Assembly (NCBI GenBank): GCA_002269645.1
Contig: NIVC01001131.1
Coordinates: 124,001-188,000 of the forward strand
Direction of reading: 5' to 3'
DNA: 64,000 nt
DNA from: Macrostomum lignano
Taxonomy: Eukaryota
Shown here: positions 1 to 29,568 of the stretch, piece by piece
Position numbering within the stretch: position 1 is the stretch's first letter
Layout of the letters: each line of letters begins with the position of its first letter
The notes under the pieces: model-generated
What the model was told of the DNA's origin: nothing
Database searches by the model: none
What the model saw: the letters and a program-made list of their open reading frames with translations, nothing else
Made by a program: the position numbers and the translations under genes

Positions 1-28
1 ATAACCCTAACCCTAACCATAACCCTAA
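1..28 (-). repeat. Short telomeric-type tract (CCCTAA on +, TTAGGG on -)
   Basis: ataaccctaaccctaaccataaccctaa at the window start; about 4.5 units, one variant. Cannot tell whether it continues beyond the window. Confidence 0.8.
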
Positions 29-8040: not shown

Positions 8041-9803
8041 TTAGCATTTTTTGTTTTAAAGTGTTTTAATAAAAAAAATATTTTGCACTACTAAGATTCG
8101 AATTCAGCTCGCTACATTAGCAGTCCAGTCTGTTCGCATCTTGGCTATTCTCTTTTCAATTGGAGAACATGAATTGTGGCCCTTATAATTCAATTCTTAT
8201 AGCAAGTCAGTTAGAGTAAAAAGTTATGACATAATCAATTTCTCAGTCAGCCAGTATCAGTCTCAATTCAAGTTAGCAATATGGTTACGCAATTACAATC
8301 AAGTATTGTGTGCATTTTTTCGACACTGTTTTCATCTTGTTGTGATGCAATCTTTATCACAATTGAAATTCAGTCAGTCAGTTTTTTCTCTCGCATTTTT
8401 ACAATGCATTCTAGGTTGAAAGAGCTGCTTGACCTTTGCAAAAAAGCATGTTTTTCGAATATTTAATCTCTTTAAAATTGAGCAATTTTTTAGCCAAGAT
8501 GCATGTACCGTCCCAGGAAAATTTCTGATCAAATGGTGCAAGTTTGAAGAAAATCGGTTGAGCCATTTTTTCTGATATCTATCGCATAGCTAGTTAGTTA
8601 CAGACATTTCATTTTTAGTATATTGGATTGCGATCTCTAGAGCGTTATGGACAAGCAAGCATACAAATATTAGAGATTTAGTATATTTAGAAGGCCAACT
8701 CCTTCTCTGGAGGAGAAAGGGGAAGAACTCCCATCACCGGAATTCCATTCCCTGAACACCATCAGCTGAATCCCAAGACCCGAATCCCATCATCCAACTT
8801 TTCTCCAAATCTAAAGTTTCTCCAGAAACTGGACTCAATCGAAATTTTCTCCGTGAAACTAAAATCCTCTCCATTTTCTTAATTCTAAGCTTTCTGTTTC
8901 CATATTTAAAACAAACAACTTACATCCCTGAACTAAGCATTAAAAGATCTTTCCAGCAATATAAGTGTCTCCTCTCAAAGTTTAAAACTCGAGGTACAGT
9001 TAGCGTTTGAAATTTACTGATTTCCCGACTGCTTGCTAGAGAAGCTCGCAAGAATTTCACTGCCAAGCTAATACAAAGGGCGCCAATAATAAAACCAATT
9101 GAATCTGGACATGTCCTATCTATCTGTTGACACTGTACAACTTCTATGTACACTCAGCCCAAGCCCTACCCCCCGTTCCGGGGGAATCATTAATTTAATT
9201 GAACCCCCCAACACGCGGGGGGTATTTGCATTGAACGCGGAACACGCGCACCCACCCCCCAAAACACAGCGACCCGCGGGCGGAGGTTGGGGTGGCTATT
9301 TTTACAAACAGACTGCAACGAATCCACTGGAGAGGCAGAGTGGCCACAGAAGGGCCAAAGAAGGTTAGGAAATCAGTTTTCTGCTTTTTTAGGGATCTCA
9401 AAATGAAAAAATTAAAGATTAATATAGCTATAAACCCAGTCCGGAAAATTTGCAGTTTTCCCATATAAGTTTCATCGCTGACTTGCCAGTAGTCTAGGAG
9501 AAAAATTGCAACACACAAACAAACATCGCGTGAGTTTTAGTATTAACGAGGCCAACTCCTCCGATGGAGGAGAAAAGGGAAGAACTCCCATCACCGGAAT
9601 TCCATTCCCTGAAACCCCTTAGCTGAATCCCATGACCCGAATCCCATCATCAAAACATCTCCAAATCCATCAAACTCCTCTCCGCGAAACAGAAATCCTC
9701 TCCGTGAAACTGAAAACCATCGAAATCCTCTCCGTAAAACTGGACTCAATCGAAATTTTCTCCGTCAAAAAGAACTCAACTCTCAGGGTTCAGTGCCATC
9801 AGT

Positions 9804-12800
9804 GGTTAGGGTTAGGGTTAGAGCTGCACAGAGCTGCGGGTTGAAAGGCGTCGATAAGAATATTGAATTAATTGAATCAATTTATTGCGCAACCGATTTC
9901 TCATTCAGTCAGTATCAGGCTCAGGTAAAGTTAACAAAAAGTTGCGCAATCTAAATCAACCCTCCAATACAAAGCGACTGACCCCCTTCCTATACACAGC
10001 GCCAGTTAGAAGTTGAAACCCCCAACTTTATCTCTCACCTCTTGCCAAAATGAGTACAATCTTTGCAGCAAGTTAAAAGTACGGAAATAGTTTTTTGAAT
10101 GCTGTGCTTTTTCTTTTCACATTTAAAGCAAACAACTTATATCCCCGAACTCAGTATTGTAAGATCTTTCCAGTAATATAAGTCTCTCCTCTGAAAGTTT
10201 AAAACTCGAGGAACAGTTAGCGCTTGAAATTTCCTGATTTAAAGCATTAAAGTATCGAGTGTACGTTCACAGCCTGCTAAAGAGGCTCGCAAGTTTATTC
10301 ATTAAATTTTACTGCCCAGCAAATACACATGGCTGCCTATTGAATGCCGCCGATAATAAAACCAATTAAATCTCGACACAGTCCTAGCTATCTCCTTACA
10401 CTGTACAACTGCTATGTACACTCAGCCCAAGCCCAACCCCCTCCCATTCCGGGGAATCGTTAAATTTAATTGAACCCCCAACACGCGGGGGGGGGTTATT
10501 TGCATTGAACGCGTAACACGCGCACCCACCACCCCTCAATACACAGCGGCCCGCGGGCGGAGGTTGGGGTGGCTATTTTTACAAACTGGCTGCAGCCCCA
10601 GTCAGAGTGGCCAAAGAAGGTTATTGAGGGTTAAAAAAACAGTTTTCTGCTTTTTTAGGGATCTTAAAATGTAAAAATGAAAAATTAAAATAGCTATAAA
10701 CCCAATCCGGAAAATTTGCAGTTTTCCCATATAAGTTTCAACGCTGACTTGCCAGTAGTCTAGGAGAAAAATTGCAACACACAAACAAACATCGCACCAC
10801 TTTTAGTATTAAGACGAGTGGAACTCCTCCTTCGGAGGAGAAAGGGAAAGAACTCCCATCACCGGAATTCCATTTGCTGGAATCCATCAGCTGAAATTCT
10901 ATGATTTGAATCCCATCGTCCAAATCCTCTGTAAAGCCTTTCAAATACCTGCGCCCTGCGCTCTCATTTTTATCCTCTTCTTTCTCCTCACTAATTTCTC
11001 CTCTCCACTCTTTCAGCTCTCTCATCTCTGATACTTCATCACTCTACTCTCTCCTCTCTCCCTTCTCTCGCTTCTCTTTCCTTTATTCCTTCTCCTCACG
11101 CTTCTGTCTCCTCTCCACTCCCTTATTTATCTCTTCTCCTTCATCTTTCGTGTCTACTCTCTCCTGTCTCCTCTCTCCCCTCTTCTCTCCTCTCTCCTCT
11201 CTCATCTACTCTCTCATCTCTCTACTCTCTTATCTATCATCTTTCCTCTACCCTCTATCTCTTCTTTTTCTCCCATCTTTCTTCTCTCCTTTCTATCATC
11301 TCCTGTCTCTTCTCTTCTTTCTTTTCTCTCCTATCCATTTTGTCTTCTCTCCTCTCCTTTCTCCTCTCATATTCTCCCCTTTCTTCTCTAATTTCTAATC
11401 TCTTCTCTCTCTTATTTTCTCACTAATCTTCTTTCTCATCGCATCTCTCATCTCTCCTCTCTGCACTCTCATCTTTTTCCTCTTCTTTCTCCTCACTACT
11501 TTCTTCTCTTACCTCTCTCATCTCTGATCTTTTATCGCTCTCCTCTCTCGCCTCTCCTCTCGCTTCTCTCTCCTCTCTACCCTGTCATCTCTACTTCTCT
11601 ATTTATTTCTTCTCCCTCGTCTTTCGTCTCTACTCTATGCTCTTCTATTTCCTCTGTACGCTTTTATCCCCCTCTCTTCTCTCCTCTCATCTCTCCTGTC
11701 TCCCTCTGCTATCTCATATCCCCTCTTTCATTTCCTCTCTCCTCTTCTCTTCTTTCTCCCTTTTCATTCCCGCCTTACTCCCCTCTTCTCTCTCATCTCT
11801 AATCTCTCCTCTCTCATATCTACTCTCTTTTCTATCATCTCTCTTCTCTTTTCTCTCTTCTCTGACTGAGTGAAGGTGCAAAGTCCATCGAAATCCTCTC
11901 CATAAAACAGAAATACTTCTAAGTCCTTTTCGTTGAACAAAACTCCACCAAAAACCTCTTCATTGAACAGAACACAACACAACACAATCAAAAGCCTCTC
12001 CGTGAAGCTGACAACCACTGAAGTCCTCTCCGTGAAACTGAAAACCGTCGAAATCGTCTCCGTGAAACAGAACTTCATCAAATTCTTTTCATGAAACTGT
12101 ATTCCATCAAAATCCTCTCTTTTCAACGTCAATCTATCAATATAATCTTCGTCAAGCTGCGATTCATCAATTTTTAATCATAATACCCGACATCTCCATG
12201 AAATTGCAGTCCATCGAAACTGCTAAATAGAGATCCAAAAGATGCTTTCCATACTTAAAAGTATTCAAGTTAAAGGCGTCAGTGGTTAGGGTTCGATTTA
12301 GGGTTAGGGTTAGGGCTACCATAATTTCATCGTTCTTCAATTTCATTGCTATCTGTAGCCTCTACTGGGCATTCACTGTGTACACTGAGCCCTATCGCCG
12401 CCACCCCCAACACGGGGTGTTTTAATTGAATTGTACGCCAGAACACGTCTCAGAAAGTTAAAAGAAAGATTTTTTCTTGAATGCTGTGCTTTTTGTTTTC
12501 ATGTTTAAAGCAAGAAACTTATATCCCCGAACTCAGCGTTGCAAGCTCTTTCCAGCAATATAAGTCTCTCCTCTCAGAGTTTAAAAATCGAGGAACAGTT
12601 AGCGTTTGTAATTTCCCAATTTCCCGACTGCTTGCCTGAGAGGCTCGAAAGTTTTTTCATTGAATTTCACTGCCCAGCTAATACACGGGGCCGATAATAA
12701 AACCAAATGAATCTCGACACAGTCTATTTACACTGTACAACTGCTATGTACACTCAGCCCAAGCCCAACCCCCGTTCTGGGGGAAGCATTAACTTTAACT

Positions 12801-15800
12801 CAACCCCCCAACACGCGGGGGGTTTTATTTGAATTGAACCCAGAACACGCGCACCCACCACCCCTCAATACACAGCGGCCCGCGGGCGGAGGTTGGGGTG
12901 GCTATTTTTACAAACTGGCTGCAGCCCCAGTCAGAGTGACAAAAGAAGGTTATTGGGGGTCAAAAAATCAGTTTTCTGCTTTTTTGAGGATGTTAGAAAT
13001 TAAAATTTCAGAATTAAAATAGCCTATAGCCGACCTCCGATAATTTCCAATCTTCCCATATAAGTTTCAACGCTGAGTTGCCACTATTCAAGGAGGAGTT
13101 GTCGAAATGACATACAGACAGACAGACAAACAACGCGTCAACTTTCGTATATACGAGTGGAACTCCTCCGGAGGAGGAGAAAGGGGAAGAACTCCCATCA
13201 CCGGAATTCCATTCCCTGAAATCCATCAGCTGAAACTCCATGACTTGAATCCCATCTTCCAAATCATCTCCAAATCCTCTGTAAAGCCTTTTTGCTCTCC
13301 TCTTGGCCCTCTCATCTCTACAGTGTAGTCTCTTATCTCTTCTCTCTAATCTGCTTTCCATCTCTAGTCTCTCATCTCTGCTCTCTCTTCTTTGCTATCT
13401 TATATCTAGTCTCTCCTCTCTCTCCTCTCATCTCTACTCCCTTATGTATCTCTTCTCCCTCGTCTTTCATCTGTACCCTCTCCTGTCTCTTGTCTCCTCT
13501 CTTCTCTCATATCTCTCCTCTTCACTTCCGTCTCCTGTCTCCTCTCTTCACTTTTATCTTCTCTCCCTCTTCTCTCCTCTCTCATATGTCATCTCTACTC
13601 ACTTATCTATCGTCTCTCTTTACCCTCTCTCTCCTCTCTGCTCTCATTTCTCATTTCTCATATACGTCTCACACTCTACTTTCTTGTCTCCCATCTTTCT
13701 TTCCTCCTTTCCACTATCCCCTGTCTCTTCTCTTCTCTCTTTTCTCCTCTCCTTTTTCCTTTCATCTTCTCCCCTCTCTTCTCTAATCTCTAATCTCTTC
13801 TCTCTTATGTTCTCACGCATCTCTTCTCATCGCATCTCTCATCTCTCCGCTCCTCACTACTTTCCTCTCTTAACTCTCTTCTCTTATCTCTGATCTTTCA
13901 TCTCTCTCTTCTCTCCTCTCTCTCCTCTCATCTCTACTACCTTATTTATATCTTCTCCCTGGTCTTTCGTCTGTACTCTCTCTTGTCTCCTTTCTCCCCT
14001 ATTTTCTCCTCTCTTCTCTCTCCCCTCCTCTCATCTCTCATCCCTCATCCCACTCTTTCTTTCTCCTCTACTCTCCCCTCTCTTCTATTTCCTCTGTACG
14101 CTCTTATCCCTCATCTATTCTCTATCCTATTATCTCTCTTGTCTCCCTCTGCTATCTCATATCTCCCCTCTCATATCCTCTCTCCTCTTGTCTTCTCTCT
14201 CCTTCGTGCCCGCCTTACTCCCCTCTTCTCTCTCATCTGTCATATCTAATCTCTCCACTCATTTCTACTCTGTTTTTTATCATCTCATCTCTCTTCTCTT
14301 TTCATTCTTCTCTTTATTATCTTCTCTTACTGATTAAAGATGCCAAATCAATCAAGATCCTCTCCGCAAAACAGAAATCCTCTCCGTGAAGCTGAACATC
14401 ATCGAAATCCTCTCCGTGAAACTGAACACCATCGAAATCCTCTCCACGAAACAGAAATCCTCTCCGTCAAAATTAAAACATTGAAATCGTCTTCGCTAAA
14501 CTGGACTCAATCGAATTTTTTCCGTCAATCAAACAACTCAACTCTCCAGATTCTTTGGTTAGGGTTAGGGTTAGGGTTAGAACTACGCACAGCTTCGTGT
14601 TAAAAGGCAATGATAAAAATATTGAACTAATTGAATCAATTCATTGCGCACCGATTTCACAGTCAGTCAGTATCAGTCGCAGTTAAAGTTAACAAAAACA
14701 TTGTGCAATCTAAATCAACCCTCCAATACACAGCAGCAGTGAGAAGTTGAACCCTCCCCCCAACTTTATCTATTACATCTCGCAAAACTGAGTACAATTT
14801 TTGCAAAAAGTTAAAAGTATGGAAATAGTTTTTCAAATGCTGTGCTTTTTATTTTCATATATAAAGCAAACAACTTAAATCCCTAAACTCAGCGTTGCAA
14901 GATATTTCCAGCAATATAAGTGTCTCCTCTCAAAGTTTAAAACTCAAGGAACAGTTAGCGTTTGAAATTTACTGATTTCCCGACTGCTTGCTAGAGAAGC
15001 TCGCAATTCATTGAATTTCACTGCCAAACTAATACACAGGGCTGCCTATAGAAAAAAGGCGCCAATAATAAAACCAATTGAATCTCGACACAGTCCTGAT
15101 TCCTATCTATCTGTTTACACTGTACAACTGCTATGTACACTCAGCCCAAGCCCAACGCCCCGTTCTGGGGAAGCATTAAATTTAACTGAACCCCCCCCAA
15201 CACGCGGGGGGTTTTATTTCCACTCGCACCCACTACCCCTCAATACACAGCGGCCCGCGGGCGGAGGTTGGGGTGGCTATTTTTACAAACTGGCTGCAGC
15301 CCCAGGCAGAGTGGCCAAAGAAGGTTATTGGGGGTTAAAAAAGCAGTTTTCTGCTTTTTTAGGGATGTTAAAATTGGAAAATTAAAAATTAAAATAGCCT
15401 AAAGCCTGCTCCGGAAAATTTGCAGTTTTCCCATATAAGTTTCGACGCTGACTTGCCAGTTGTCTAGGAGAAAAATCGCAACACACACACAATCATCGCA
15501 CCAGTTTTAGTATTAACGAGGCCAACTCCTCCGATGGAGGAGAAAGGGGAAGAACTCCCATCACCGGAATTCCATTCCCTGAACTCCATCAGCTGAATCC
15601 CAAGACCCGAATCCCATTATCTAACTGTTCTCCAAATCCATCAAAATCCTCTCTGTGAAACTGAACACGATCGAAATCCTCTCCGCGAAACAGAAATCCT
15701 CTCCGTGAAACTGGACTCAATCGAAAGTTTCTCCGTCAAACAACTAAACTCTCAGGATTCAGTGGTTAGGGTTAGGGTTAGGGTTGGAGCTGCACAGAGC

Positions 15801-18800
15801 TGCGTGTTGAAAAGGTCCGATAAAAAATGAGATAATTGAATCAAAAGATTGCGCAATTTACGCTCGTATTTATAAGTCAGTCAGTATCAGTCTCAGTTAA
15901 AGTTAACAAAAATATTGCGCAATCTAAATCAACCCTCCATCCAATACACAGCGACCGACCCCCTTCCAATACGCAGTGGCAATTAGAAATTGAACCCCCC
16001 CCCAACTGTTGGGGGGTCAGTCGAACACCATTGAACTCCTAAAATGAGTACAATCTTTGCAATAAGTTAAAAGTATGGAAATAGTTTTTCCAATGCAGAG
16101 CATTTAGTTTTCATATTTAAAGCAAACAATTTATATCCCCGAACTCAGCGTTGCAAGTTCTTTCCAGCAATATAAGTCTCTCCTCTCAAAGTTAAAAACT
16201 CCAGCAACAGTCTGAGTTTGAAATTTGCCGATTTATAGCATTGCAATATTGAGTGTACGTTCATACGTTCACTGCCTGCTAAAGAGGCCCGCAAGTTTAT
16301 TCATTGAATTTCACTGTCTAACCAATGCACAGGGCAGTCAATTGAAAGGCGCTGATAATAAAACCAATTGAATCTCAGCACAATAGCCATATAATTGCGC
16401 TTACTTACCCACCACCCCACGAAATACACACAGTTCAATTTTTCAGCCGGGGTCCGCTTGTACACACGCTGCCACTGAGAACGCGACCAACCCCCACTGG
16501 CGAGAAAATACACTACAGAGATAGGAGAAAGTTGTGGCGCAATCGCTCAAAATCATGCAAATTTTCGGCTCCGAGCAGAAAAAGTGTCCAGAGAAGGTTA
16601 GGAAATCAGTTTTCTGCTTTTTTAGGGATCTTAAAATGTGAAAATAAAAAATTGAAATAGCCCACTGCAGTCCCCGGAAAATTTGCAGTTTCCCCATATA
16701 AGTTTCAACGCTGACTTGCAAGTATTCTAGGAGGAGTTATGCAACACACAAACAAACAGACAAACAAACAAACAATCATCGCACCAACTTTAGTATTAGG
16801 ACGAGGCCAACTCATCCAATGGAGGAGAAAGGGGAAGAACTCCCATCACCGGAGTTCCATTCCCTGAAATCCATCAGCTGAATCCCATTATTTAACTAAG
16901 CTCCGCGAAACTGAACACCATCGAAATCCTCTCCGTGAAACTGGACTGAATCAAAATTTTCTCCGTCAAAAAGAACTCAACACTCAGGATTCATTGGTTA
17001 GGGTTAGGGTTAGAGCTGCACACAGCTGCGTGCTGAAAAGCGCCGATAAAAAGATTTAATTGATTGATCAATTGATTGCGCAATGTATTTCTCAGTCAGT
17101 CAGTCAGTATCAGTCTCAGTTAAAGTTAACAAAAAGATTGCGCAATCAAAATCAACCCTCCAGTACACAGTGACCGCCCCCCCCACTAAAGCACACTGAG
17201 CAATTAGAAATTCAACCCTCGAACTTTATCTATTATGTCTCGCAAAAATGAGCACAATCTTTAAAAAAAGTTAAAAGTATGAAAATAGTCTTTCGAATGC
17301 TGCGCCTTTTCTTTTCACATTTAAAGCAAACAAATTATATTCCCTAACTCAGCGTTGCAAGATCTTTCCAGCAATATAAGTGTCTTCCTTTAAAGTTTAA
17401 AACTCGAGGAACAGTTAACGTTTAAATTTTTCTGATTTAGAGCATTGAATTTTTAAGAGTACATTCACTGCCTGCTACAGTGGGAGGCTCGCACGTTTAT
17501 TCATTGAATTTCACTGCCGCCTCAACACCCCTAACACGGGGGGGGTTCTATTTGCTCCATTGCTCAGTGCACACAGCGCAATCGCTAAAAAACAGTGCAC
17601 ACAGTTGTGGCGCAATCACTAAAAAAAATTGTCAACCGGCCCGGCTACACCCCCTCAGTTAAAAGAATACACTACACAAATAGGCCAGCTGTTGTGGCGT
17701 AATCATTAAGAGTTGCGCAAGGTGATCGTAATCCCTATTGTTATACTATTTCTGCTTTTTTAGGGATCTTAAAATATGAAAATGCAAAATTTTAATAGCC
17801 TAAAGCTATCCTCGGACAATTTGCAGTTTTCCCATATAAGTTTCAACACTGACTTGCGAGTAGTCTGGGAGGAGTTATGCAACAAACGGACGCACAAACA
17901 TCGCACCAACTTTAGTATTAGGAGAGAAGAGTGGAACTCCTCCTCTGGAGGAGAAAGGGGAAGAACTCCCATCACCGGAATTCTGAAGGGGAAGAACTCC
18001 CATCAGCTGAAATTCCATGACTTGAATCCCATCTTCCAAATCATCTCCAAATCCTCTACAATGCATTTCAATTACCGGATATCTTGTTTTCCCTATTTGC
18101 AAAAACTCACTGGCATTGTCCAGACTCGGACTCTCATGTCTCTGCTCTCATTTCTCATATCTCATATCTTTCATATCACCCTCTCCTTTCTTATCTTCCA
18201 TCTTTCTGCCCTCCTTACTACCGTCTCTTGTCACCTCTCTTTTCTCTCCTCTCCATTCTCTCTTCTCTCCTTTCCTTTCTCGTCTCATCTTCTCCCCTCT
18301 CTTCTCAAATATCTCTCTCTCTTTTCTCACTAATCTCTTTTCTATTTGCATCTCTCATCTCTCTCCTCTCATCTGTACTATCTTATTTATCTCTTCTCCC
18401 AGGTCTTTCAAATTTACTCTCTCCTGTCTCCTCTCTCCCCTCGTCTCTCCTCTCTCATATCTCTCCTCTACTCACTTATCTATTCTCTCTACTCTGCTCC
18501 CCTTTTACACTTTCCTATATGCTCTCACTCTCACCCTCTCCTTTCTTATCTTATGCTCTCACTCTCACCCTCTCCTTTCTTATCTCCTGTTTTTTACACT
18601 CCTTTCTACCACCTGTCTCCTCTCGTTTCTCTCCTCTCTGCACTCTCATCTTTACCCTCTTCTTTTTCCTCACTACTTTCTTCTCTTAAATCTCTGATCT
18701 CTGATCTTTCATCTCTCTCCTCTCAACTCTCACCTCTCTCCTCTCTTTCCTCTCTTCTATTGCCTCTGTGCGCTCTTATCCCTCTTTTCTTCTCTGTCCT

Positions 18801-20284
18801 GTCTCCTCTCTGCTATCTCATATCTCCTCTCTCATATCCTCTCCCTTCATCTCCTCTCTCCTCTTCTCTTCTCTCTCCTTCGTTCCCGCCTTACTCCCCT
18901 CTTCTCTCCCATCTGTCATGTCTAATCTCTCCACTCATTTCTACTCTGTTTTCTATCATCTCATCTCTCTTCTCTTTTCATTCTTCTCTTTACTCTCTTC
19001 TCTGACTGATTGAAGATGCCAAATCCATCAAGATCCTCTCCGCGCGAAGCAGAAATCCTATCCGTGCAACTGAAAACCATCGAAATCCTCTCCGTGAAAC
19101 TGGACTCCTTCGAAATCCTCTCCTTGAAACTTAAATCCATCAAAATCGTCTCCATAAAACAGAAATCAATCATAAATTATCTCCGCGAAACAGAAATCCT
19201 CTCCGTGAAGCTGAACATCATCGAAATCCTCTCCGTGAAACTGAACACCATCGAAATCCTCTCCACGAAACAGAAATCCTCTCCGTCAAAATTAAAACAT
19301 TGAAATAGTCTCTGCTAAACTGGACTCAATCGATTTTTTCCGTCAAACAACTCAACTCTCTGGATTCATTGGTTAGGTTTAGGGTTAGGGTTAGAACTAC
19401 GCACAGCATAGTGTTAAAAGGCACTGATAAAAATATTGAACTAATTGAATCAATTCATTGCGCAACCGATTTCACAGTCAGTCAGTCAGTATCAGTCTCA
19501 GTTAAGGTTAAAAAAAACATTGCGCAATCTAAATCAACCTTCTAATACACAGCAGCAGTGAGAAGTTGAACCCTCCCCCCCAACTTTATCTATTACGTCT
19601 CGCAAAACTGAGTACAATCTTTGCAGAAAGTTAAAATTATGGAAATAGTTTTTCAAATGCTGTGCTTTTTCTTTGTATATTTAAAGCAAACAACTTATAT
19701 CCCCGAACTCAGCGTTGCAAGATCTTTCCAGCAATATAAGTCTCTCCTCTCAAAGTTTAAAACTCGAGGAACAGTTAGCGTTTGTAATTTCCCAATTTCC
19801 CGACTGCTTGACTGAGAGGCTCGCAAGTTTATTCATTGAATTTCACTGCCCAGCTAATACACAGGGCCGATAATAAAACCAAATGAATCTCGACACAGTC
19901 TATTTACACTGTACAACTGCTATGTACACTCAGCCCAAGCCCAACCCCCGTTCTGGGGGAAGCATTAACTTTAACTCAACCCCCCAACACGCGGGGGGTT
20001 TTATTTGAATTGAACCCAGAACACGCGCACCCACCACCCCTCAATACACAGCGGCCCGCGGGCGGAGGTTGGGGTGGCTATTTTTACAAACTGGCTGCAG
20101 CCCCAGTCAGAGTGACAAAAGAAGGTTATTGGGGGTCAAAAAATCAGTTTTCTGCTTTTTTGAGGATGTTAGAAATTAAAATTTCAGAATTAAAATAGCC
20201 TATAGCCGACCTCCGATAATTTCCAATCTTCCCATATAAGTTTCAACGCTGAGTTGCCACTATTCAAGGAGGAGTTGTCGAAAT

Positions 20285-20326
<42 letters not shown>

Positions 20327-23300
20327 GACAGACAAACAACACGTCAACTTTAGTATATATAGATAGACGAGTGGAACTCCTCCTCTGGAGGAGAACGGGG
20401 AAGAACTCTCATCACCGGAATTCTGAAGGGGAAGAACTCCCATCAGCTGAAATTCCATGACTTGAATCCCATCTTCCAAATAATCTCCAAATCCTCTACA
20501 ATGCATTTCAATTACCGGATATCTTGTTTTCCCTAGTTGCAAAAACTCACTGGCATTGTCCAGACTCGGACTCTCATGTCTCTGCTCTCATTTCTCATAT
20601 CTCATATCTTTCATATCACCCTCTCCTTTCTTATCTTCCATCTTTCTGCCCTCCTTACTACCGTCTCTTGTCACCTCTCTTTTCTCTCCTCGCCATTCTC
20701 TCTTCTCTCCTTTCCTTTTTCCTCTCATCTTCTCCCCTCTCTTCTCAAATCTCTCTCTCTCTCTTTTCTCACTTATCTCTTTTCTATTTGCATCTCTCAT
20801 CTCTCATCTCTCTCCTCTCATCTGTACTATCTTATTTATCTCTTCTCCCAGGTCTTTCAAATTTACTCTCTCCTGTCTCCTTTCTCCCCTCGTCTCTCCT
20901 CTCTCATATCTCTTCTCTACTCACTTATCTATTCTCTCTACTCTGCTCCCCTTTTACACTTTCCTATATGCTCTTACTCTCACCCTCTCCTTTCTTATCT
21001 CCTGTTTTTTACACTCCTTTCTACCACCTGTCTCCTCTCGTTTCTCTCCTCTCTGCACTCTCATCTTTACCCTCTTCTTTCTCCTCACTACTTTCTTCTC
21101 TTAAATCTCTGATCTCTGATCTTTCATCTCTCTCCTCTCAACTCTCACCTCTCTCCTCTCTTTCCTCTCTTCTATTGCCTATGTGCGCTCTTATCCCTCT
21201 TTTCTTCTCTGTCCTGTCTCCTCTCTGCTATCTCATATCTCCTCTCTCATATCCTCTCCCTTCATCTCCTCTCTCCTCTTCTCTTCTCTCTCCTTTGTTC
21301 CCGCCTTACTCCCCTCTTCTCTCCCATCTGTCATGTCTAATCTCTCCACTCATTTCTACTCTGTTTTCTATCATCTCATCTCTCTTCTCTTTTCATTCTT
21401 CTCTTTACTCTCTTCTCTGACTGATTGAAGATGCCAAATCCATCAAGATCCTCTCCGCGAAGCAGAAATCCTGTCCGTGCAACTGAAAACCATCGAAATC
21501 CTCTCCGTGAAACTGGACTCCTTCGAAATCCTCTCCTTGAAACTTAAATTCATCAAAATCGTCTCCATAAAACAGAAATCAATCATAAATTATCTCCACG
21601 AAACAGAAATCCTCTCCGTGAAGCTGAACACCATCGAAATCCTCTCCACGAAACAGAAATCCTCTCCGTCAAAATTAAAACATTGAAATCGTCTCCGCTA
21701 AACTGGACTCAATCAATTTTTTTCCGTCAAACAACTCAACTCTCCGGATTCATTGGTTAGGGTTAGGGTTAGGGTTAGAACTACGCACAGCTTCGTGTTA
21801 AAAGGCAATGATAAAAATATTGAACTAATTGAATCAATTCACTGCGCAACCGATTTCACAGTCAGTCAGTATCAGTCTCAGTTAAAGTTAACAAAAGCAT
21901 TGCGCAATCTAATCAACCCTCCAATACACAGCAGCAGTGAGAAGTTGAACCCTCCCCCCAACTTTATCTATTCGTCTCGCAAAACTGAGTACAATTTTTG
22001 CAAAGTTAAAAGTATGCAAATAGTTTTTTAAATGCTGTGCTTTTTCTTTTCATATTTAAAGCAAACAACTTATATCCCCGAACTCAGCGTTGCAAGATCT
22101 TTCCAGCAATATAAGTTTCTCCTCTCAAAGTTTAAAACTCGAGGAACAGTTAGCGTTTGAAATATCCCAATTTAAAGCATTGAACTATCGAGTGTACGCA
22201 TACGTGCACTGCCTGCTAAAAAGGCTTGCAAGTTTATTCATTGAATTCCACTGCCGCCCCAGCACCCTCAACACAGGGGGGGTTTGGTTAAGTTCTCAGT
22301 GCACACAGTTGTGGCGCAATCGCTAAAAATTGATGTCAACCGGCCCAGCTTACCCCCTTCAGTTGAAAGAATACACGGCACAGATATGCCGGCTGTTGTG
22401 GCGCAATAATTGTAAATTACGCAAGATGTTCATATTCCCCTATTGTTTTACTACTTCTGCTTTTTTAGTGATCTTAAGACGTGAAAATAAAAAAATTGAA
22501 ATAGCTTACTGCCATCCTCGGAAAATTTGCAGTTTTCCCAAATAAGTTTCAACGCTGACTTGCAAGTCGTCTAGGAGGAGATATGTATCACACAAACAGA
22601 CAAACAACGCACCAACTTTAGTATTAACGAGGCCAACTCCTCCTCTGGAGGAGAAAGGGGAAGAACTCCCATCACCGGAATTCCATTCCCTGATCTCCAT
22701 CAGCTGAATCCCATCATCTAACTGTTCTCCAAATCCATTAAAATCCTCTCCGTGAAACTGAACACCATCGAAATCCTCTCCGCGAAACAGAAATCCTCTC
22801 CGCGAAACTGGACCCAATCGAAATTTTCTCCGTCAAACAGAACTCAACTCTCAGGATTCATTAGTTAGGGTTAGGGTTAGAGCTGCACAGAGCTGCGGGT
22901 TGAAAGGCGCCGATAAAAATATGAATTAATTGAATCAATTTATTGCGCAACCGTTTTCTCATTCAGTCAGTATCAGGCTCAGGTAAAGTTAACGAAATGA
23001 TTGCGCAATCTAAATCAACCCTCCAATACACAGCGACTGACCCCCTTCCGCAGTGGCAATTAAAAGTTGAACCGCCCCCCCCCTCCTACCAACTGTTGGG
23101 GGGTTGGTCGAACCCCCATTGAACCCCAAAATGAGTACAATATTTCCAGAAAGTAAAAGGTATGGAAGTTGTTTTCGATCGCTGTGTTTTTTCTTTTCGC
23201 ATTTAAAACAAACAACTTATATCCCCGAACTCAGTGTTGCGAGATCTTTCCAGCAATATAAGTTGAGTTTAGAACTCGAAGAACAGTTTGCGTTTGAAAT

Positions 23301-26300
23301 GTCCCGATTTAAAGCATTGAAGTATCGAGTGTACGTTCACCTGCCTGCTAAAAAGGCTCGCAAGTTGATGCATTGAATTTCAGTGTGCAAAAAATACACC
23401 GGGCTGCCTAATTGAAAATCAGAGCACATATCGTTGCGCGATTGTCTATACAGTCAGCCCGTGCGCCAAGGTCCAAGTGTACACACGCCGCCACTGAGAA
23501 CGCAAGCACCCCCCACTGGAGAGAAAATACACTGCAGAGATAGGAGAAAGTTATGGCGCAATCGCTCAAAATTCATGCAAGTTTTCAGCTCCAAGCAGAA
23601 AGAGGGGACAAATAAGATTATCAAAGGTCAATATTGCAGTTTTTTGCTTTTTTCGGGATCTTAAAATGCAAAAATAAAAAATTGAAATAGCCCACTGCCA
23701 TCCTCGGAAAATTTGCAGTTTTCCCATATAAGTTTCGACGCTGACTTGCAAGTCGTCTAGGAGGAGATATGTATCACACAGACAAACAACGCACCACTTT
23801 TAGTATTTACGAGGCCAACTCCTCCTTCGGAGAAGAAAGGGGAAGAACTCCAATCAGCGGAATTCCATTCCCTGAACTCCATCAGCGGAATCCCATTTTC
23901 CAACACCTCTCCGCGCAACAGAAATCGTCTCCGTGAAACTGAACACTATCGAAATCCTCTCCGTGAAACTGGACTAAATCGAAATTTCTCCGTCAAACAG
24001 CCCAGCTCTCAGAATTCATTGGTTAGGGTTAGGGTTAGGGTTAGAGCTACACACAGCTGCGTGTTGAAAGGCGCCGTAAAAACATTGAACCAATTAAATT
24101 GCGCAACTTATTTCTCAGGCAGTCACTATCAGCGTCGGTTAAAGTTAACAAAAAGATTGCGCAATCTAAATCAGCCCTCCAATACACAGCAACCGACCCC
24201 CTTCCAATACGCAGTGCAGCTAGAAATTGAACCCCCCTACCAACTATTGGGGGGGGGGGGTCGGTCGAACCCCCATTGAACTCCAAAATGAGCAAAATCT
24301 TTGCAGAAAGCTAAAAGTATGAAAATCTTTTCTTGAATGCTGTGAATTTAATTTTCATATTTAAAGCAAAAAACTTATATCCCCGAACTCATTGCAGCAA
24401 GATCTTTCCAGCAATATAAGTCTCTCCTCTCTAAGTTCAAAACTCGAGCAACAGTTAGTGTTTGAAACTTTCTGATTTTAAGCATTGAAATATCGAGTGT
24501 ACGTTCACTGCCTGCTAAAGATGCTCGCAAGTTTATGCATTAAAATGCACTGAATTTCACTGTGCAAAAAATACACAGGGCTTCCTGTTAAAAAACAGAA
24601 CACAAATAGTTGCGCAATTGTCTATAAAGTCAGCCAGTGAGCCAGGGTCCAATTGTACACACGCCGCCAATGAGAACGCGCCCATTCCCCCACAGGAGAG
24701 AAAATGCACTGGCGACATAGGAAAAAGTTGTGGCGTAATCACTCAAAATTTATGCCAATTTTCAGCTCCGAGCAGAAAGAGGGGACAATTAAGATTATCA
24801 AAGGTCAGAATTGCTGCTTTCTGCTTTTTTAGGGATCTTAAAATTTAAAAATGAAAGATTAAAATAGCCTAAAGCCATCGTCGGAAAATTTGCAGTTTTC
24901 CCATATAAGTTTCAACGCTGAGTTGCAAGTATTCTAGGAGGAGTTATCGAACTGACATACATACAGACAAACAACGCACCACTTTTAGTATTAAGACGAG
25001 TGGAACTCCTCCTTCGGAGGAGAAAGGGGAAGAACTCCCATCACCGGAATTCCATTCCCTGAATTATCCATCAACTGAAATTCCATGTCTTGAACCCAAT
25101 CTTCCAAATAGTCTCCAAATTCTTTACAAAACCTTTCAAAGACCATAGCTTAAAGACTCTTACGTCTCTCATATCTACTCTCTCCTCTCTTCGCTATTAT
25201 CGTGACTCGCTTCTCTCTCCTCTCTCTCATCTCATCTCTACCCCTACTCTCTTATTTATCTCTACTCCCTTATTTATCTCTACTCCCTTATTTATCCCTT
25301 ATTTATTCTCCCTCTCCTGTCTACTCTCCTATCTTCTATCTTATCTCTCCCCTTTTCTCTCCTCTCTCATATCTCATCTCTAATCACTTATCTATCGTCT
25401 CCGCTCTACTTTCCCTCATCCCTTTTCTCTCTTCTCTCTGCTCTCATTTCTCGTATCTCTTATACGCTCTCAACCTCTCCTTTCTTATCTCCCATTTTTC
25501 TTCCCTCCTTTCTACTGCATCACCTGTCTCCTCTCCTCTCTTTTTTCTCCTCTCCATTCTCTCTTCTCTCCTCTCATCTCCCCTCATCTCTTATCTAATC
25601 TCTAATCTCTTCTCCCTCATATCTCTTCTCTACTCACTTATCTATTCTCTCTCTTTGCTCCCCTTTTACACTTTCCTATATGCTCTCACACTCACCCTCT
25701 CCTTTCTTATCTCCTGTTTTTTACACTCCTTTCTACTACCTGTCTCCTCTCGTTTCTCTCCTCTCTGCACTCTCATCTTTACCCTCTTCTTTCTCCTCAC
25801 TACTTTCTTCTCTTAAATCTCTGATCTCTGATCTTTCATCTCTCTTCTCTCACCTCTCTCCTCTCTTGCCTCTCTTCTATTGCCTCTGTACGCTCTTATC
25901 CCTCCTTTCTTTTCTCTCCTGTCTCCTCTCTGCTATCTCATATCTCCTCTCTCATATCCTCTCCCTTCATCTCCTCTCTCCTCTTCTCTTCTCTCTCCTT
26001 TGTTCCCGCCTTACTCCCCTCTTCTCTCCCATCTGTCATGTCTAATCTCTCCACTCATTTCTACTCTGTTTACTATCATCTCATCTCTCTCCTCTCTCCT
26101 CTCTCTCTTCTCCTTTCGCTTCTCTCTCCTCTCTCTCCTCTCATCTCTACTACCTTGTTTATATCTTCTCCCTGGTCTTTTGTCTCTACTCTCTCTCTTG
26201 TCTCCTTTCTCCCCTCTTTTCTCCTCTCTTCTCTCTCCTCTCTCCCCTCCTCTCTCATCTCTCATCTCCTCATCTCACTCTTTCTTTCTCCTCTACTCTC

Positions 26301-26979
26301 CCCTCTCTTCTATTACCTCTGTACGCTCTTATCCCTCATCTATTCTCTCTCCTATCATCTCTCTTGTCTCTCTCTGCTATCTCATATCTCCCATCTCATC
26401 TCCTCTCTCCTCTTCTCTTCTCTCTCCTCCGTTCCCGCCTTACTCCCCTTTTCCCTCCCATCTGTCATGTCTAATCTCTCCACTCATTTCTACTCTGTTT
26501 TCTATCATCTCATCTCTCTTCTCTTTTCAGTCTTCTCTTTACTCTCTTCTCTGACTGATTGAAGATGCAAAATCCATCAAGATCCTCTCCGCGAAGCAAA
26601 AATCCTGTCTGTGCAACTAAAAACCATCGAAATCCTCTCCGTGAAACTGGACTCCTTCGAAATCCTTTCCTTAAAACCTGAATCCATCAAAATTGTTTCC
26701 ATAAAACAGAAATCAATCATAAATTATCTCAGCGAAACAGAAAGCCTCTCCGTGAAGCTGAACATGATCGAAATCCTCTCCGTGAAACTGAACACCATGG
26801 AAATCCTTTCGTGAAACTGAACATCATCGAAATCCTCTCCACGAAACAGAAATCTTCTCCGTCAGAATTTAAACATTGAAATCGTCTCCGCTAAACTTGA
26901 CTTAATCGAATTGTTTCCGTCAAACAACTCAACTCGCCAGATTCATTAGGGTTAGGGTTAGGGTTACGGTTAGGGTTAG
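9804..26979 (+). repeat. Ten interstitial telomeric tracts at unit junctions
   Basis: Tracts at 9804-9821, 12284-12315, 14557-14580, 15764-15787, 16996-17013, 19371-19394, 21755-21778, 22863-22880, 24021-24044 and 26944-26979; 3-6 GGTTAG units each. Confidence 0.95.
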
Positions 26980-28570
26980 AACTACGCACAGCTTTGTGTT
27001 AAAAGGCACAGATAAAAATATTGAACTAATTGAATCAATTCATTGCGCAACCGATTTCTCAGTAAGTCAGTATCAGCCTCAGGTAAAGTTAACAAAAACA
27101 TTGCGCAATCTAAATCAACACTCCAATACACAGCAGCAGTGAGAAGTTGAACCCTCCCCCCAGCTTTATCTATTACGTCTCGCAAAACTGAGTACAATCT
27201 TTGCAGCAAGTTAAAAGTATGGAAATAGTTTTTTCAAATTCTGTGCTTTTTCTTTTCATATTTAAAGCAAACAACTTATATCCCCGAACTCAGCGTTGCA
27301 AGATCTTTCCAGCAATATAAGTTTCTCCTCTCAAAGTTTAAAACTCGAGGAACAGTTAGCGTTTGAAACTGTCTGATTTATAGCATTGAAGTATGGAGTG
27401 TACGTTCACTGCCTGCTTGCAAGTTGATGCATTGAATTTCAATGTCCAACAAATACACAGGGCTGCCCATTGAGAGGCAGGAAAACTTATCAGTAGCCAT
27501 ATCATTGCGCAATTATCTATACAGTCAGCCAGTGAGCCAGGGTCCAAGTGTACACACGCAGCCACTGAGAACGCTCCCACCCCCCACTGGAAAGAAAATA
27601 CACTACAGAGATAGGGAAAAGTTGTGGCGCAATCACTTGAAATTCATGCAAATTTTCAGCTCCAAGCAGAAAGAGGGGACAATTAAGATTATCAAAGGTC
27701 AAGACCGCCGTTTTCTGCTTTTTTGAGGATCTTAGAAATTAAAATTTCAGAATTAAAATAGCCTATAGCCGACCTCGGATAATTTCCAATCTTCCCATAT
27801 AAGTTTCAACGCTGAGTTGCCACTATTCAAGGAGGAGTTGTCGAAATGACAGACACACAGACAGACATACAGACAAACAACACGTCAACTTTAGTATAGA
27901 GACGAGTGGAACTCCTCCTTCGGAGGAGAAAGGGGAAGAACTCCCATCACCGGAATTCCATTCCTTGAAATCCATCAGCTGCATCCCATGACCCGAATCC
28001 CATCTTCCAAATTCTTTAAAAACATTTCAAAGACCATAGCTCAAAGACTCTCACGTCTCTCATATCTCCTCTCTTCTGTCTTTTCTATCCTTTCTATTCT
28101 TTCTTCTCTCCTCTCATTTTCTACCTTCTCTAATCTCTCATCTTTTCTCTCCTATTTTCTCACTCTCTTTTCTCATCGCATCTCTCATCTCTCCTCTCTG
28201 CACTATTATCTTTACCCTCTTCTTTCTCCTTACTGCTTATTTCTCATAACTCTCACATCTTTTCTGATCTTTTTTCTCTCTCCCTTCTCCTCTCTCTTCT
28301 CTCTCCTCTTTCTCTTCTCATCTCTACTCCCTTTATCTATCTCTTCTCCCTCGTCTTTCGTCTCTACTTTCTCCGCTCTCCTCTCCTCTCTCCTCTCTCC
28401 CTTCTCCTCTCATCTCTACTACCTTATTTATCTCTTCTCCCTGATTCCCTGGTAATTCGTCTCTACTCTTTCCTGTATCTCCCCCCTCTTTTCTCATATC
28501 TTCTCTCTCCTCTCTCAACTCTCATCCCTCATCTCACTCTACTTTCACCTCTACTCTCTCCTATCTTTTA
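10960..28570 (+). repeat. Six long polypyrimidine (CT-rich) blocks inside the long units
   Basis: Blocks at about 10960-11870, 13290-14335, 18135-19010, 20575-21420, 25150-26555 and 28050-28570; G nearly absent on +. The 18.1 kb and 20.6 kb blocks are near-identical. Confidence 0.9.
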
Positions 28571-29132: not shown

Positions 29133-29265
29133 AGAGAGATAAAGCCTGCTCCGGAAAATTTGCAGTTTTCCCATATAAGTTTCGACGCTGACTTGGCAGA
29201 ATTGTAGGAGTTCACTTACAACATACAGACAAACAACACGTGAGTTTTAGTATTAAGAGAGAAGA
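29133..29265 (+). mobile_element. Solo copy of the array-unit terminal module (possible non-autonomous rolling-circle/HINE-like end)
   Basis: aaagcctgctccggaaaatttgcagttttcccatataagtttcgacgctgac...acagacaaacaacacgtgagttttagtatt stands alone in unique sequence. Family assignment is inference only. Confidence 0.45.
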
Positions 29266-29568
29266 GAAGAGGATTTTAAGATTGTTTAACATGTAGATCT
29301 AGCGGAAAAGTAGCTGTTTTCTCATTCATTATAGTTAATTGAATTAAATAATCTTACTTCATAGCTACGAGCGTAACATCGGAAGTGATTTATAGGCGCT
29401 GACTACTTGAGATGGTAGTTTTTTAAGAAACTAGAAGTACAAGCCATTAAAATAGAGCAGGCAATACATCCACTCATACATAATTAGAGATAACTGTGCA
29501 CACAGTCCACATTGACCCACGTACATTGGCATATTCATTGTGCTACAACCAACTAAACCCATTGCAAG

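What the first reader, a model, noticed from the sequence alone, without database searches (positions are those of the whole stretch)
8690..28570. Macrosatellite whose units are delimited by short telomere tracts and arranged in a 4-unit higher-order repeat
Seen: spacings between the ten tracts are about 2480, 2273, 1207, 1232, 2375, 2384, 1108, 1158 and 2923, i.e. long-long-short-short repeating. Post-tract flanks run A,G,G,A twice (aactacgcac versus agctgcac/agctacac types). The variant gccgacctc(c/g)gataatttccaatcttccc occurs only at ~13028, ~20205 and ~27766, and a 62-codon stretch translates identically at 12834 and 20010. Established: telomere-tract-separated tandem elements exist (yeast Y'), as do higher-order satellites. 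Inference: a subtelomeric or ex-subtelomeric element amplified by unequal exchange or circles. No enzyme ORF is present.
Basis: partly seen in the sequence, partly recalled or inferred. Interest (0 to 1): 0.7.

Follow-up and report, generated by a model that had tools for sequence, protein, structure and literature searches.

The report
Chromosome-end tandem repeat carrying telomere tracts
A non-coding tandem repeat of eleven 1.1-2.9 kb units, probably near a chromosome end of an animal genome, carries the same short TTAGGG tract in every unit; it is real but is a known kind of chromosome-end repeat, like yeast Y' and nematode TALT arrays, and the claimed four-unit super-repeat holds only in part.

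Summary
Ten + strand (TTAGGG)2-3 tracts lie at the stated spacings. The long-long-short-short order, the alternating post-tract flank types and the three-copy variant are all present.

The tracts punctuate a head-to-tail array of eleven non-coding composite units (8643-28570). More degenerate relatives fill window 1-8.7 kb. The window opens with a CCCTAA tract, so it is probably a chromosome end.

All ten tracts sit at one homologous position, which points to a single acquisition followed by amplification with the unit. The array edges and the exchange breakpoints are not at the tracts.

A four-unit architecture of about 7.1 kb is real but old and eroded:
- In-register blocks align better than out-of-register blocks.
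- Only one of three modules groups units four apart.
- The most similar stretch, about 97% on average (93-99.5% per 200-nt window) over 1.2 kb, joins adjacent units.
- The middle module has three unrelated variants that ignore the period.

The tracts point the opposite way to the terminal tract, which argues against simple telomere healing or ALT at this end. The tract is nevertheless the best conserved stretch of the unit.

No enzyme ORF and no Rfam family was found.

Verdict: a new member of a known kind (Y'/TALT-like subtelomeric macrosatellite with an embedded telomere tract). Interest is moderate to low.

The parts
5..28 (-). Degenerate terminal-type telomere tract (CCCTAA CCCTAA CCATAA CCCTAA on the + strand). 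It is probably the inner edge of the real telomere at a contig start.
   Evidence: its orientation is opposite to the ten internal tracts
269..321 (+). Isolated copy of the M1 motif (CAGTCAGTATCAGT...GTTAACAA...GCAATCTAAATCAA), following a 22-bp minisatellite
   Evidence: nhmmer E=7e-6
4411..4867 (+). Partial diverged unit (M1, profile positions 77-526) with no telomere tract
   Evidence: nhmmer E=1e-58; blastn
8230..8303 (+). Isolated M1 motif of a degenerate unit
   Evidence: nhmmer E=2e-10
8643..8868 (+). Left edge of the array: an M3b+M4 fragment joined directly to M1 position ~266 of U0, with no tract at this junction
   Evidence: nhmmer positions 899-1124; sequence
8874..9805 (+). U0, short class, 5'-truncated, M2 variant Y
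9806..12297 (+). U1, long, G-type flank, M2 variant Y. Tract T1 9806-9817; CT-rich part ~10956-11863.
12298..14558 (+). U2, long, rearranged A-type 5' end, M2 variant Y, M3 variant. Tract T2 12298-12315; CT-rich part ~13290-14330.
14559..15765 (+). U3, short, A-type, M2 variant Y. Tract T3 14559-14576.
15766..16997 (+). U4, short, G-type, M2 variant X. Tract T4 15766-15783.
16998..19378 (+). U5, long, G-type, M2 variant Z. Tract T5 16998-17009; CT-rich part ~18131-19005.
19379..21756 (+). U6, long, A-type, M2 variant Y, M3 variant. Tract T6 19379-19390; CT-rich part ~20571-21420.
21757..22864 (+). U7, short, A-type, M2 variant Z. Tract T7 21757-21774.
22865..24022 (+). U8, short, G-type, M2 variant X. 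Tract T8 22865-22876.
24023..26945 (+). U9, long, G-type, M2 variant X. Tract T9 24023-24040; CT-rich part ~25157-26555.
26946..28570 (+). U10, long class, A-type, M2 variant X, M3 variant. Tract T10 26946-26975, including a TTACGG variant repeat. The array ends inside the CT-rich part (~28047-28570), with no M4 module and no closing tract.
12298..19378 (+). Four-unit block 1 (A-long, A-short, G-short, G-long), 7081 bp
   Evidence: aligned in register with block 2: 75.8% matches per mean length and 89.6% identity in aligned columns
19379..26945 (+). Four-unit block 2, 7567 bp
   Evidence: patches of at least 94% identity at +7.1-7.2 kb
17749..19798 (+). Recently exchanged segment, matching 20149-22173 one unit downstream. 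It is 90% identical overall and 93-99.5% per 200-nt window (about 97% on average) over 17890-19090. It runs straight through tract T6/T7.
12688..13112 (+). 425 nt exactly identical to 19864-20288 (U2 = U6): a recent conversion between units four apart
29141..29258 (+). Solitary copy of the M3a module (TATA-like 28-nt motif, ACA-rich microsatellite, TTTAGTATT), 570 bp beyond the array
   Evidence: nhmmer E=1.5e-28; alignment A1

Best explanation
This is a non-coding, composite subtelomeric macrosatellite in which a short interstitial telomere tract is an inherited internal part of the unit.

Unit layout, read on the + strand:
- a tract, (TTAGGG)2-3;
- a 5' flank and module M1, about 520 nt;
- module M2, which exists in three unrelated variants;
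- module M3, about 350 nt, with a TATA-like motif, an ACA-rich microsatellite and a very conserved GGAAGAACTCCCATCACCGGAATTC core;
- in 'long' units only, 0.5-1.4 kb of CT-rich low-complexity DNA;
- one to eight copies of a 30-bp minisatellite (M4).

Shown: all ten tracts occupy the same homologous position, so the tract was acquired once, in an ancestor of this subfamily. Older relatives to the left (1-8.7 kb) lack it.

Inferred history: the unit amplified head to tail. A four-unit block (A-long, A-short, G-short, G-long; about 7.1 kb) was then duplicated about 2.5 times. Since then the copies have diverged to 70-90% identity and have been patched repeatedly by unequal exchange or gene conversion, both between neighbours and between units four apart.

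Inferred function: because the tract is the best conserved stretch of the unit, it is probably maintained, most simply as a binding site for a double-strand telomere-repeat-binding protein. That would make the array a telomere-protein-binding, heterochromatic buffer next to the chromosome end. It would not be a set of healing seeds, because the tracts point the wrong way for that.
For: Ten tracts against 0.21 expected. Their flanks align on both sides; T2 is rearranged but still shares TCAGTGG upstream and CTAC...TCAATTTCATTGC downstream.

All copies lie on the + strand and are contiguous. Profile hits cover 8643-28092, and weaker tract-less copies lie at 269, 4411 and 8230.

The mosaic: U5/U6 at 93-99.5% per window (about 97% on average) over 1.2 kb, U2/U6 exactly identical over 425 nt, and other patches of 94-96% at +7.1-7.2 kb, in a background of 70-90%.

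Period 4: the length order LLSSLLSSLL is 1 of 210 possible arrangements. The flank-type order is 4 of 252 if U2's rearranged flank is counted as A-type. Both figures are my own counts. In-register blocks give 73-76% matches per mean length, against 55-63% at shifts of 5-6 units. For M3 the permutation p is 0.0095.

The tract is internal: the array edges lie in M3b (8643) and in the CT-rich part (~28570), and the 2-kb exchanged segment 17749-19798 spans a tract.

Tract conservation: TTAGGGTTAGGG is intact in all ten units, and the longest invariant run of the 1.2-kb alignment lies in it.

Non-coding: no Pfam match and no Rfam match at gathering score or at E up to 1.

Chromosome end: a CCCTAA tract at bases 5-28.
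Against: The window alone cannot show that base 1 is a contig or chromosome end. It also cannot show whether copies exist at other ends.

Protein binding and heterochromatin are inferred only. Conservation of the tract could instead come from slippage-driven homogenisation of a microsatellite, or from gene conversion.

A single origin does not exclude an origin by end repair (see the first rival).

The organism is unknown. It is probably an invertebrate animal, judging from WSC-domain exons, a Maverick/Polinton-like element and CpG o/e of 0.7, so TTAGGG as its telomere motif is assumed from the tract at 5-28.
Confidence: 0.6

Rival explanations
1. A TALT/Y'-type relic. A block flanked by telomere repeats was copied in tandem onto an eroded chromosome end by break-induced replication (ALT-like repair), with telomerase adding a few repeats at each round. 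The array was later internalised and decayed.
For: The architecture matches the five- to six-copy 'short telomeric repeat + TALT1' array at chromosome V right in wild C. elegans, which is read as a trace of ALT repair (PMC6581047, PMC9066243, PMC4595603). The array lies 8.7 kb from a terminal-type tract. The units are head to tail, and tract length varies from 2 to 5 repeats with a variant repeat in T10.
Against: The tracts read TTAGGG on the + strand, whereas the terminal tract at the left end reads CCCTAA, so they are inverted relative to this end. The array does not begin or end at a tract. The tract-unit junctions are the same on both sides in nine of ten cases, so nothing points to repeated independent additions. 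Recent exchange segments run through tracts rather than ending at them.
Confidence: 0.2
2. An array of non-autonomous mobile elements: telomere-targeting retroelements of the SART/TRAS, HeT-A, MoTeR or Athena kind, or rolling-circle Helitron/Helentron-derived elements with internal tandem repeats. These would have been inserted or read through head to tail.
For: Pieces of the unit occur on their own: M3a at 29141-29258 and M1 pieces at 269, 4411 and 8230. A 28-nt core of M3a followed by an ACA-rich microsatellite occurs in an unrelated animal contig from a metagenome, L001. The unit holds microsatellite and minisatellite modules, as some non-autonomous elements of invertebrates do (from memory).
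Against: There is no reverse transcriptase, endonuclease, Rep/helicase or any other Pfam domain, and no hammerhead or other Rfam family. There is no poly(A) and there are no variable 5' truncations at the tract junctions. No terminal inverted repeats or target-site duplications were seen. The copies are contiguous in one orientation with unit-internal array edges. The tract orientation fits neither terminal attachment nor insertion into this end's telomere.
Confidence: 0.08
3. An assembly artefact: a smaller repeat wrongly expanded or stitched together by the assembler.
For: Subtelomeric repeats are error-prone. Two patches are 98-100% identical.
Against: The units differ by 10-30%, carry three unrelated M2 variants and differ in length, so each is individually recognisable. 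The near-identical patches are at most 1.2 kb, short enough for single long reads to span.
Confidence: 0.05
4. A tandem array of small non-coding RNA or promoter units. Each unit carries TATA-like boxes (CAATATAAGTCTC in M1, CATATAAGTTTC in M3) that drive + strand transcripts running into the UUAGGG tract, in the manner of TERRA, or that feed small-RNA production.
For: The two TATA-like islands and a T-run (TGCTTTTTT) are among the few invariant runs of the unit. The M3 motif is conserved over 28 nt in another animal contig.
Against: There is no Rfam match and there are no transcript data. Conserved islands can also be relics of transposon ends.
Confidence: 0.07

Closest known systems
C. elegans TALT1 array at chromosome V right in wild strains CB4856 and DL226 (PMC6581047, PMC9066243, PMC4595603)
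   Same: Tandem head-to-tail copies of a roughly 1.5-kb-scale non-telomeric block, each accompanied by a short telomere-repeat tract, in a subtelomere of an animal with working telomerase. Copy number changes by duplication that uses repeat homology.
   Different: TALT1 copies are young (over 97% alike between strains), number five or six, and have a known internal donor flanked by two interstitial tracts. The TALT1 array is read as end repair. Here there are 11 copies at 70-99% identity, the units are composite with minisatellites, a period-4 pattern is present, the array edges are not at tracts, and the tracts are inverted relative to the terminal tract.
Saccharomyces cerevisiae Y' elements (from memory: Chan and Tye 1983; Louis and Haber 1990-92)
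   Same: Subtelomeric elements in tandem, separated by short telomere-repeat tracts and homogenised by recombination.
   Different: Y' is 5.2 or 6.7 kb and encodes a helicase. Its tracts have the telomere's orientation and it lies directly under the telomere at many ends. Here there is no ORF, the tracts are inverted, and distribution over other ends is unknown.
Short interstitial telomeric sequences, and (TTAGGG)n islands between human subtelomeric duplicons (PMC4032850, listed by the search but not read; Nergadze et al. from memory)
   Same: Tracts of a few exact TTAGGG repeats embedded in non-telomeric subtelomeric DNA, which can bind shelterin components.
   Different: In the human case they mark the borders of large low-copy duplicons and point towards the telomere. 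Here one tract has been multiplied as part of a 1-3 kb tandem unit.
Higher-order repeat satellites, such as primate alpha satellite
   Same: Monomer types recur with a fixed period, here four.
   Different: A true higher-order repeat has copies 95-100% alike and monomers 60-80% alike. Here block copies are about 89% alike in aligned columns, no better than the best monomer pairs, and one module ignores the period.
Telomere-specific retroelements: Drosophila HeT-A/TART, Bombyx SART/TRAS, Magnaporthe MoTeR, rotifer Athena (from memory)
   Same: Head-to-tail arrays at chromosome ends with telomere repeats between the elements.
   Different: Those elements encode, or derive from elements that encode, Gag or reverse transcriptase, and show variable 5' truncation and defined 3' ends. 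None of this is seen here.
Non-coding or gene-poor macrosatellites near telomeres, such as human D4Z4 (from memory)
   Same: Kilobase-scale units, a subtelomeric position, and copy-number change by unequal exchange.
   Different: D4Z4 units are nearly identical and carry DUX4. They hold no telomere tract.

Membership tests
Y'/TALT-type telomere-tract-flanked subtelomeric tandem element | Head-to-tail copies, each separated from the next by a short telomere-repeat tract | tested here: met
   Ten tracts between eleven units, all on the + strand
Y'/TALT-type telomere-tract-flanked subtelomeric tandem element | Tracts in the same orientation as the chromosome's terminal telomere | tested here: not met
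   The internal tracts read TTAGGG on the + strand, and the terminal-type tract at 5-28 reads CCCTAA on the + strand. This holds only if 5-28 is the true end.
Y'/TALT-type telomere-tract-flanked subtelomeric tandem element | The amplified block is bounded by telomere tracts, so the array starts and ends at a tract | tested here: not met
   The left edge is at 8643 inside M3b, and the right edge is at about 28570 inside the CT-rich part
Y'/TALT-type telomere-tract-flanked subtelomeric tandem element | Position next to a chromosome end | tested here: inconclusive
   A CCCTAA tract lies at bases 5-28 of the window. Whether base 1 is a contig end cannot be seen.
Y'/TALT-type telomere-tract-flanked subtelomeric tandem element | Copies at several chromosome ends or an internal donor copy; amplification when telomerase fails | not testable with these tools
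   The genome is not available. One metagenome scan found only a 28-nt motif.
Y' element proper | Encodes a helicase ORF | tested here: not met
   No Pfam domain in any ORF of the array
Higher-order repeat satellite | Monomer types recur with a fixed period | tested here: met
   Length class and flank type have period 4. In-register blocks give 73-76% matches, against 55-63% out of register.
Higher-order repeat satellite | Units one period apart are much more alike than units within a period | tested here: not met
   Across all columns, units four or eight apart are 78.1% identical and the others 77.5% (p=0.33). Only M3 is significant (p=0.0095). The best long match is between adjacent units U5 and U6.
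Telomere-specific non-LTR or Penelope-like retroelements | Reverse transcriptase or Gag coding capacity, or a recognisable remnant | tested here: not met
Telomere-specific non-LTR or Penelope-like retroelements | Variable 5' truncation and a fixed 3' end (poly(A) or a telomere-complementary tail) at the junctions; hammerhead ribozyme in Penelope-like elements | tested here: not met
   The junctions are constant on both sides in 9 of 10 cases and there is no poly(A). No Rfam hit at E up to 1.
Short interstitial telomeric sequence inserted at a repaired break | A few exact repeats inserted into otherwise continuous sequence, shown by an empty orthologous or paralogous site | tested here: inconclusive
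   The tract-less relatives at 4411 and 8230 do not align upstream of the M1 motif, so no clean empty site was recovered

The most novel reading that the evidence does not exclude
The array is a naturally fixed, old TALT-like reservoir in an animal with TTAGGG telomeres. On this reading it is a relic of telomerase-independent end repair that was later inverted or internalised. Its telomere tracts are now kept by selection as binding sites for telomere proteins, and they are the best conserved 12 nt of an otherwise fast-diverging unit. It could be re-used as a template when telomeres fail.
Probability: 0.15. Interest if true: 0.6.

Novelty: new member of a known kind. Interest (0 to 1): 0.33.

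Why it matters
If this window is a true chromosome end, it gives a fully resolved example from an animal, outside yeast and C. elegans, of a subtelomeric tandem element that carries telomere tracts. It is old enough to show how such arrays decay and are patched by conversion. The tract outlasts the rest of the unit, which makes a simple question testable: are short inverted telomere tracts in subtelomeres kept because telomere proteins bind them? Otherwise this is an ordinary piece of subtelomeric repeat architecture.

Tried and rejected
- **Coding capacity.** Ten non-low-complexity ORFs of the array were scanned against Pfam, and nothing was found below E=0.02.
- **Known RNA families.** Rfam at gathering score on the whole window, and at E up to 1 on 14.3-24.1 kb, gave nothing. 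ARAGORN found no tRNA.
- **Transposon ends.** An inverted-repeat search in two units found only short internal palindromes (C6-N7-G6) and a 16-18 nt complementarity between the M1 and M3 islands, in crossed order. That is not a hairpin and not terminal repeats.
- **M3a versus the left-hand module.** I suspected by eye that M3a is homologous to a second repeated module in the left 8.7 kb (520-685, 920-1078, 5085-5333, 8473-8638). A profile of that module did not hit any unit at E up to 10, so I make no such claim.
- **Relatives elsewhere.** Literal sequence strings were not found in the literature library.
- **Identifying the organism.**
  - The TBP-like protein found only two hits, at 59-60% identity, in unnamed ENA assemblies.
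  - The WSC exon found nothing.
  - The capsid-like protein found unnamed Logan and JGI contigs.
  - The organism stays unknown.
- **Block alignments at shifts 1-3.** These overlapped physically and aligned to themselves, so they were discarded. Only shifts 4-6 are used.
- **The megablast list at 93% identity or more.** It over-represents the +7.1 kb diagonal, because the longer U5/U6 alignment averages 90% and was filtered out. The window-by-window scan corrects this.
Full report
**What is there**

The window is eukaryotic DNA, 42% G+C, CpG o/e about 0.7 and with no N. Searching TTAGGGTTAGGG with up to one mismatch gives 26 overlapping matches, against 0.21 expected. They resolve into ten + strand tracts of two or three perfect repeats (five in the last, with one TTACGG) at 9806, 12298, 14559, 15766, 16998, 19379, 21757, 22865, 24023 and 26946. 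There is one more tract at bases 5-28, in the opposite orientation. The flank types, the three-copy variant at 13029/20205/27768 and the identical stretch are also confirmed. The identical stretch is 425 nt of exact DNA identity, so the 'identical codons' carry no coding meaning.

**Anatomy of the unit**

Self-comparison, a multiple alignment and a profile search show eleven head-to-tail units, U0-U10, all on the + strand, between 8643 and about 28570. Read from a tract, each unit holds:
- a 5' flank and module M1, about 520 nt. M1 includes a (CAGT)n-like motif and a conserved island around CAATATAAGTCTC;
- module M2, about 250 nt;
- module M3, about 350 nt. M3 includes AATTTGCAGTTTTCCCATATAAGTTTC, an ACA-rich microsatellite, TTTAGTATT and the most conserved 30-mer of the unit, AAAGGGGAAGAACTCCCATCACCGGAATTC;
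- in six 'long' units only, 0.5-1.4 kb of CT-rich low-complexity sequence;
- one to eight copies of a 30-bp minisatellite, GAAATCCTCTCCGTGAAACTGAACACCATC.

The long ORFs in the array are read-through of the CT-rich part. None of ten other ORFs matches Pfam. No Rfam family matches, even at E up to 1.

**The tract is an inherited internal part of the unit**

The sequences on both sides of the tract align in all units. Tract T2 has rearranged flanks but still shares TCAGTGG upstream and CTAC...TCAATTTCATTGC downstream. A diverged piece of M2 replaces part of its M1. One acquisition followed by amplification therefore explains all ten tracts.

The array does not start or end at a tract. Its left edge, at 8643, lies in M3b and is joined by a deletion to M1 position ~266 of U0, with no tract at that junction. 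Its right edge lies inside the CT-rich part of U10. The most recent large exchange, 17749-19798 against 20149-22173, runs straight through a tract. 'Delimited by telomere tracts' is therefore a choice of phase, not a property of the amplification.

Weaker tract-less relatives of M1 lie at 269-321, 4411-4867 and 8230-8303. Each follows a different minisatellite array. A second repeated module recurs at 520, 920, 5085 and 8473. The whole of 1-29 kb is thus a series of related + strand units, and only the younger subfamily carries the tract.

**Is it a four-unit higher-order repeat?**

Partly. In favour:
- The length classes run L L S S L L S S L L for U1-U10. That is the only period-4 arrangement out of 210 possible orders (my count).
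- The flank types have period 4 as well, which is 4 of 252 orders if U2's rearranged flank is counted as A-type (my count).
- The M3 variant marks U2, U6 and U10.
- Patches of 94-96% identity lie at +7.1-7.2 kb.
- Non-overlapping four-unit blocks aligned in register give 73-76% matches per mean length, against 55-63% at shifts of five or six units.

Against:
- Over the whole alignment, units four or eight apart are no more alike than the others (78.1 against 77.5%, permutation p=0.33). The same holds for M1 (p=0.62) and M2 (p=0.73). Only M3 groups by period (85.5 against 80.3%, p=0.0095).
- M2 has three unrelated variants, distributed regionally rather than periodically: Y in U0-U3 and U6, X in U4 and U8-U10, Z in U5 and U7.
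- The A-type flanks are all 92-98% alike, whatever their distance apart.
- The best long match in the array joins the adjacent units U5 and U6, at 93-99.5% per 200-nt window (about 97% on average) over about 1.2 kb.
- Whole-unit nearest neighbours are four apart for only three of eleven units.

The fair summary is an old four-unit block, duplicated about 2.5 times, now about 89% alike in aligned columns, and overwritten by later local exchanges.

**Position and orientation**

The window begins ATAA CCCTAA CCCTAA CCATAA CCCTAA. A window is unlikely to start within four bases of such a tract by chance, so this is probably a contig start at the inner edge of a telomere. The array would then lie 8.7-28.6 kb from the end. 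The + strand is the C-rich strand across the first 30 kb (GC skew about -0.1 to -0.5), like the telomere's own C strand.

The internal tracts nevertheless read TTAGGG on the + strand, so they are inverted relative to the terminal tract. This differs from Y', from TALT arrays and from human subtelomeric islands. At this end the tracts cannot act as seeds for telomerase after a break, because the 3' end left on the centromeric fragment would be C-rich.

**Conservation of the tract**

TTAGGGTTAGGG is intact in all ten units, although the units differ by 10-30%. The longest run of invariant columns in the 1.2-kb alignment lies in the tract. The tract window is among the five best conserved 30-mers. 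This points to maintenance, by selection or by slippage and conversion. From established knowledge, TRF-type Myb proteins bind double-stranded TTAGGG repeats as dimers (from memory). On that basis I infer that a single protein-binding site per unit is the most likely function. This step is not shown.

**Comparison with what is known**

The closest described case in animals is the 'short telomeric repeat + TALT1' array at chromosome V right of wild C. elegans. It has five copies in CB4856 and six in DL226, and it is read as a trace of ALT and break-induced replication, with brief telomerase action at each copy (PMC6581047, PMC9066243, PMC4595603). Yeast Y' arrays are the classical case (from memory). 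The present array shares their architecture but fails three tests of membership: tract orientation, array edges at tracts, and (for Y') a helicase ORF. Two further tests cannot be made, namely distribution over other ends and behaviour without telomerase. It works like a subtelomeric macrosatellite with a passenger telomere tract. Whether it began as an end-repair product remains open, and I put that at about 0.2.

Retroelement or rolling-circle origins have little support. There are no enzyme remnants, no ribozyme, no poly(A), no variable truncation and no terminal repeats or target duplications. Pieces of the unit are probably transposon-derived, however. A solitary M3a copy lies at 29141-29258, and its 28-nt core, followed by an ACA-rich microsatellite, occurs in an unrelated animal contig that carries SRCR-type exons (my reading of the sequence).

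Misassembly is unlikely, because every unit is individually distinct. Only reads can settle it.

**Verdict**

This is a new member of a known kind, of moderate to low interest. The points worth following up are the inverted orientation, the exceptional conservation of the tract, and whether other chromosome ends carry the same array.

Noticed in passing
window 31350-40955: A 9.6-kb Maverick/Polinton-like element inserted in one copy of a segmental duplication. It has 72-nt terminal inverted repeats that are 99% complementary (AGTAGTAGG...), extended by 17-35 bp tandem repeats, and a 6-bp target duplication, AACATA/AACATG. On the - strand it carries an rve integrase fragment (38004-38294, E=2.5e-10), a capsid-like ORF (36785-37759, 324 aa against about 425 aa in relatives, so broken), a weak Ulp1-like protease, a weak AAA ATPase and a TBP-like gene (33401-34000, Pfam TBP E=2e-20). 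No polymerase ORF was recognised, so the element is probably a deleted copy. The sequence was not assembled or printed.
   Followed up: partly
L004 (JGI metagenome contig Ga0450780_102753) and L003: Relatives of the capsid-like protein (71% and 81% identity) sit on contigs with the same gene order. In L004 the order is rve integrase, capsid-like, further ORFs and a TBP-domain gene at the end. A TATA-binding-protein-like gene therefore seems to be a regular passenger of this Maverick/Polinton lineage, which is unusual and worth a look.
   Followed up: partly
window 29429-30968 + 40956-46100 versus 56687-63954: A segmental duplication (83-91% identity) carrying paralogous exons: a WSC domain (41807-42112 and 59107-59412; Pfam E=3e-17) and a galactose-binding-like or F5/8-C-like exon (29575-29859 and 56826-57110; 41070-41666 and 58371-59078). 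It also holds shared minisatellites (29-31 bp at 44797-45072 and 62601-62921; 14 bp AGAATGGCAGATTC at 45645-46385 and 63494-63955).
   Followed up: partly
window 1-8640: The 8.6 kb between the terminal-type tract and the array is almost wholly minisatellite: 22 bp x10 (50-270), 16/27 bp (1153-2126), 29-30 bp (2278-3956), 18 bp (5498-5967) and 23 bp x87 (6027-8042). It is interleaved with degenerate copies of unit modules, all on the + strand, and with a second repeated module at 520-685, 920-1078, 5085-5333 and 8473-8638.
   Followed up: partly
window 4250-4360 and 8090-8170 (- strand): Two homologous stretches that look like a tRNA-derived SINE head on the - strand (GTGGGTTCGAA T-arm-like motif), each just upstream of an M1 motif. 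ARAGORN calls no tRNA.
   Followed up: no
L001 126-153 (metagenome contig Ga0056132_1069845): A 28-nt exact match (AATTTGCAGTTTTCCCATATAAGTTTCA) to module M3 of the units, followed by an ACA-rich microsatellite as in the units. The flanks are otherwise unrelated, and the contig carries SRCR-type exons. This is either a transposon end or a conserved promoter-like motif shared between animals.
   Followed up: partly
window 55489-55987: A (GAGAG)n array of about 100 copies. Its complement cross-matches the CT-rich parts of the long units at about 70% identity. That is low-complexity resemblance only, not homology.
   Followed up: no
window 51226-51324 and 61941-62246: Two very young minisatellites: 15 bp x6.6 at 100% identity (TTTCGTCAACCGGCA) and 31 bp x9.9 at 98%.
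   Followed up: no
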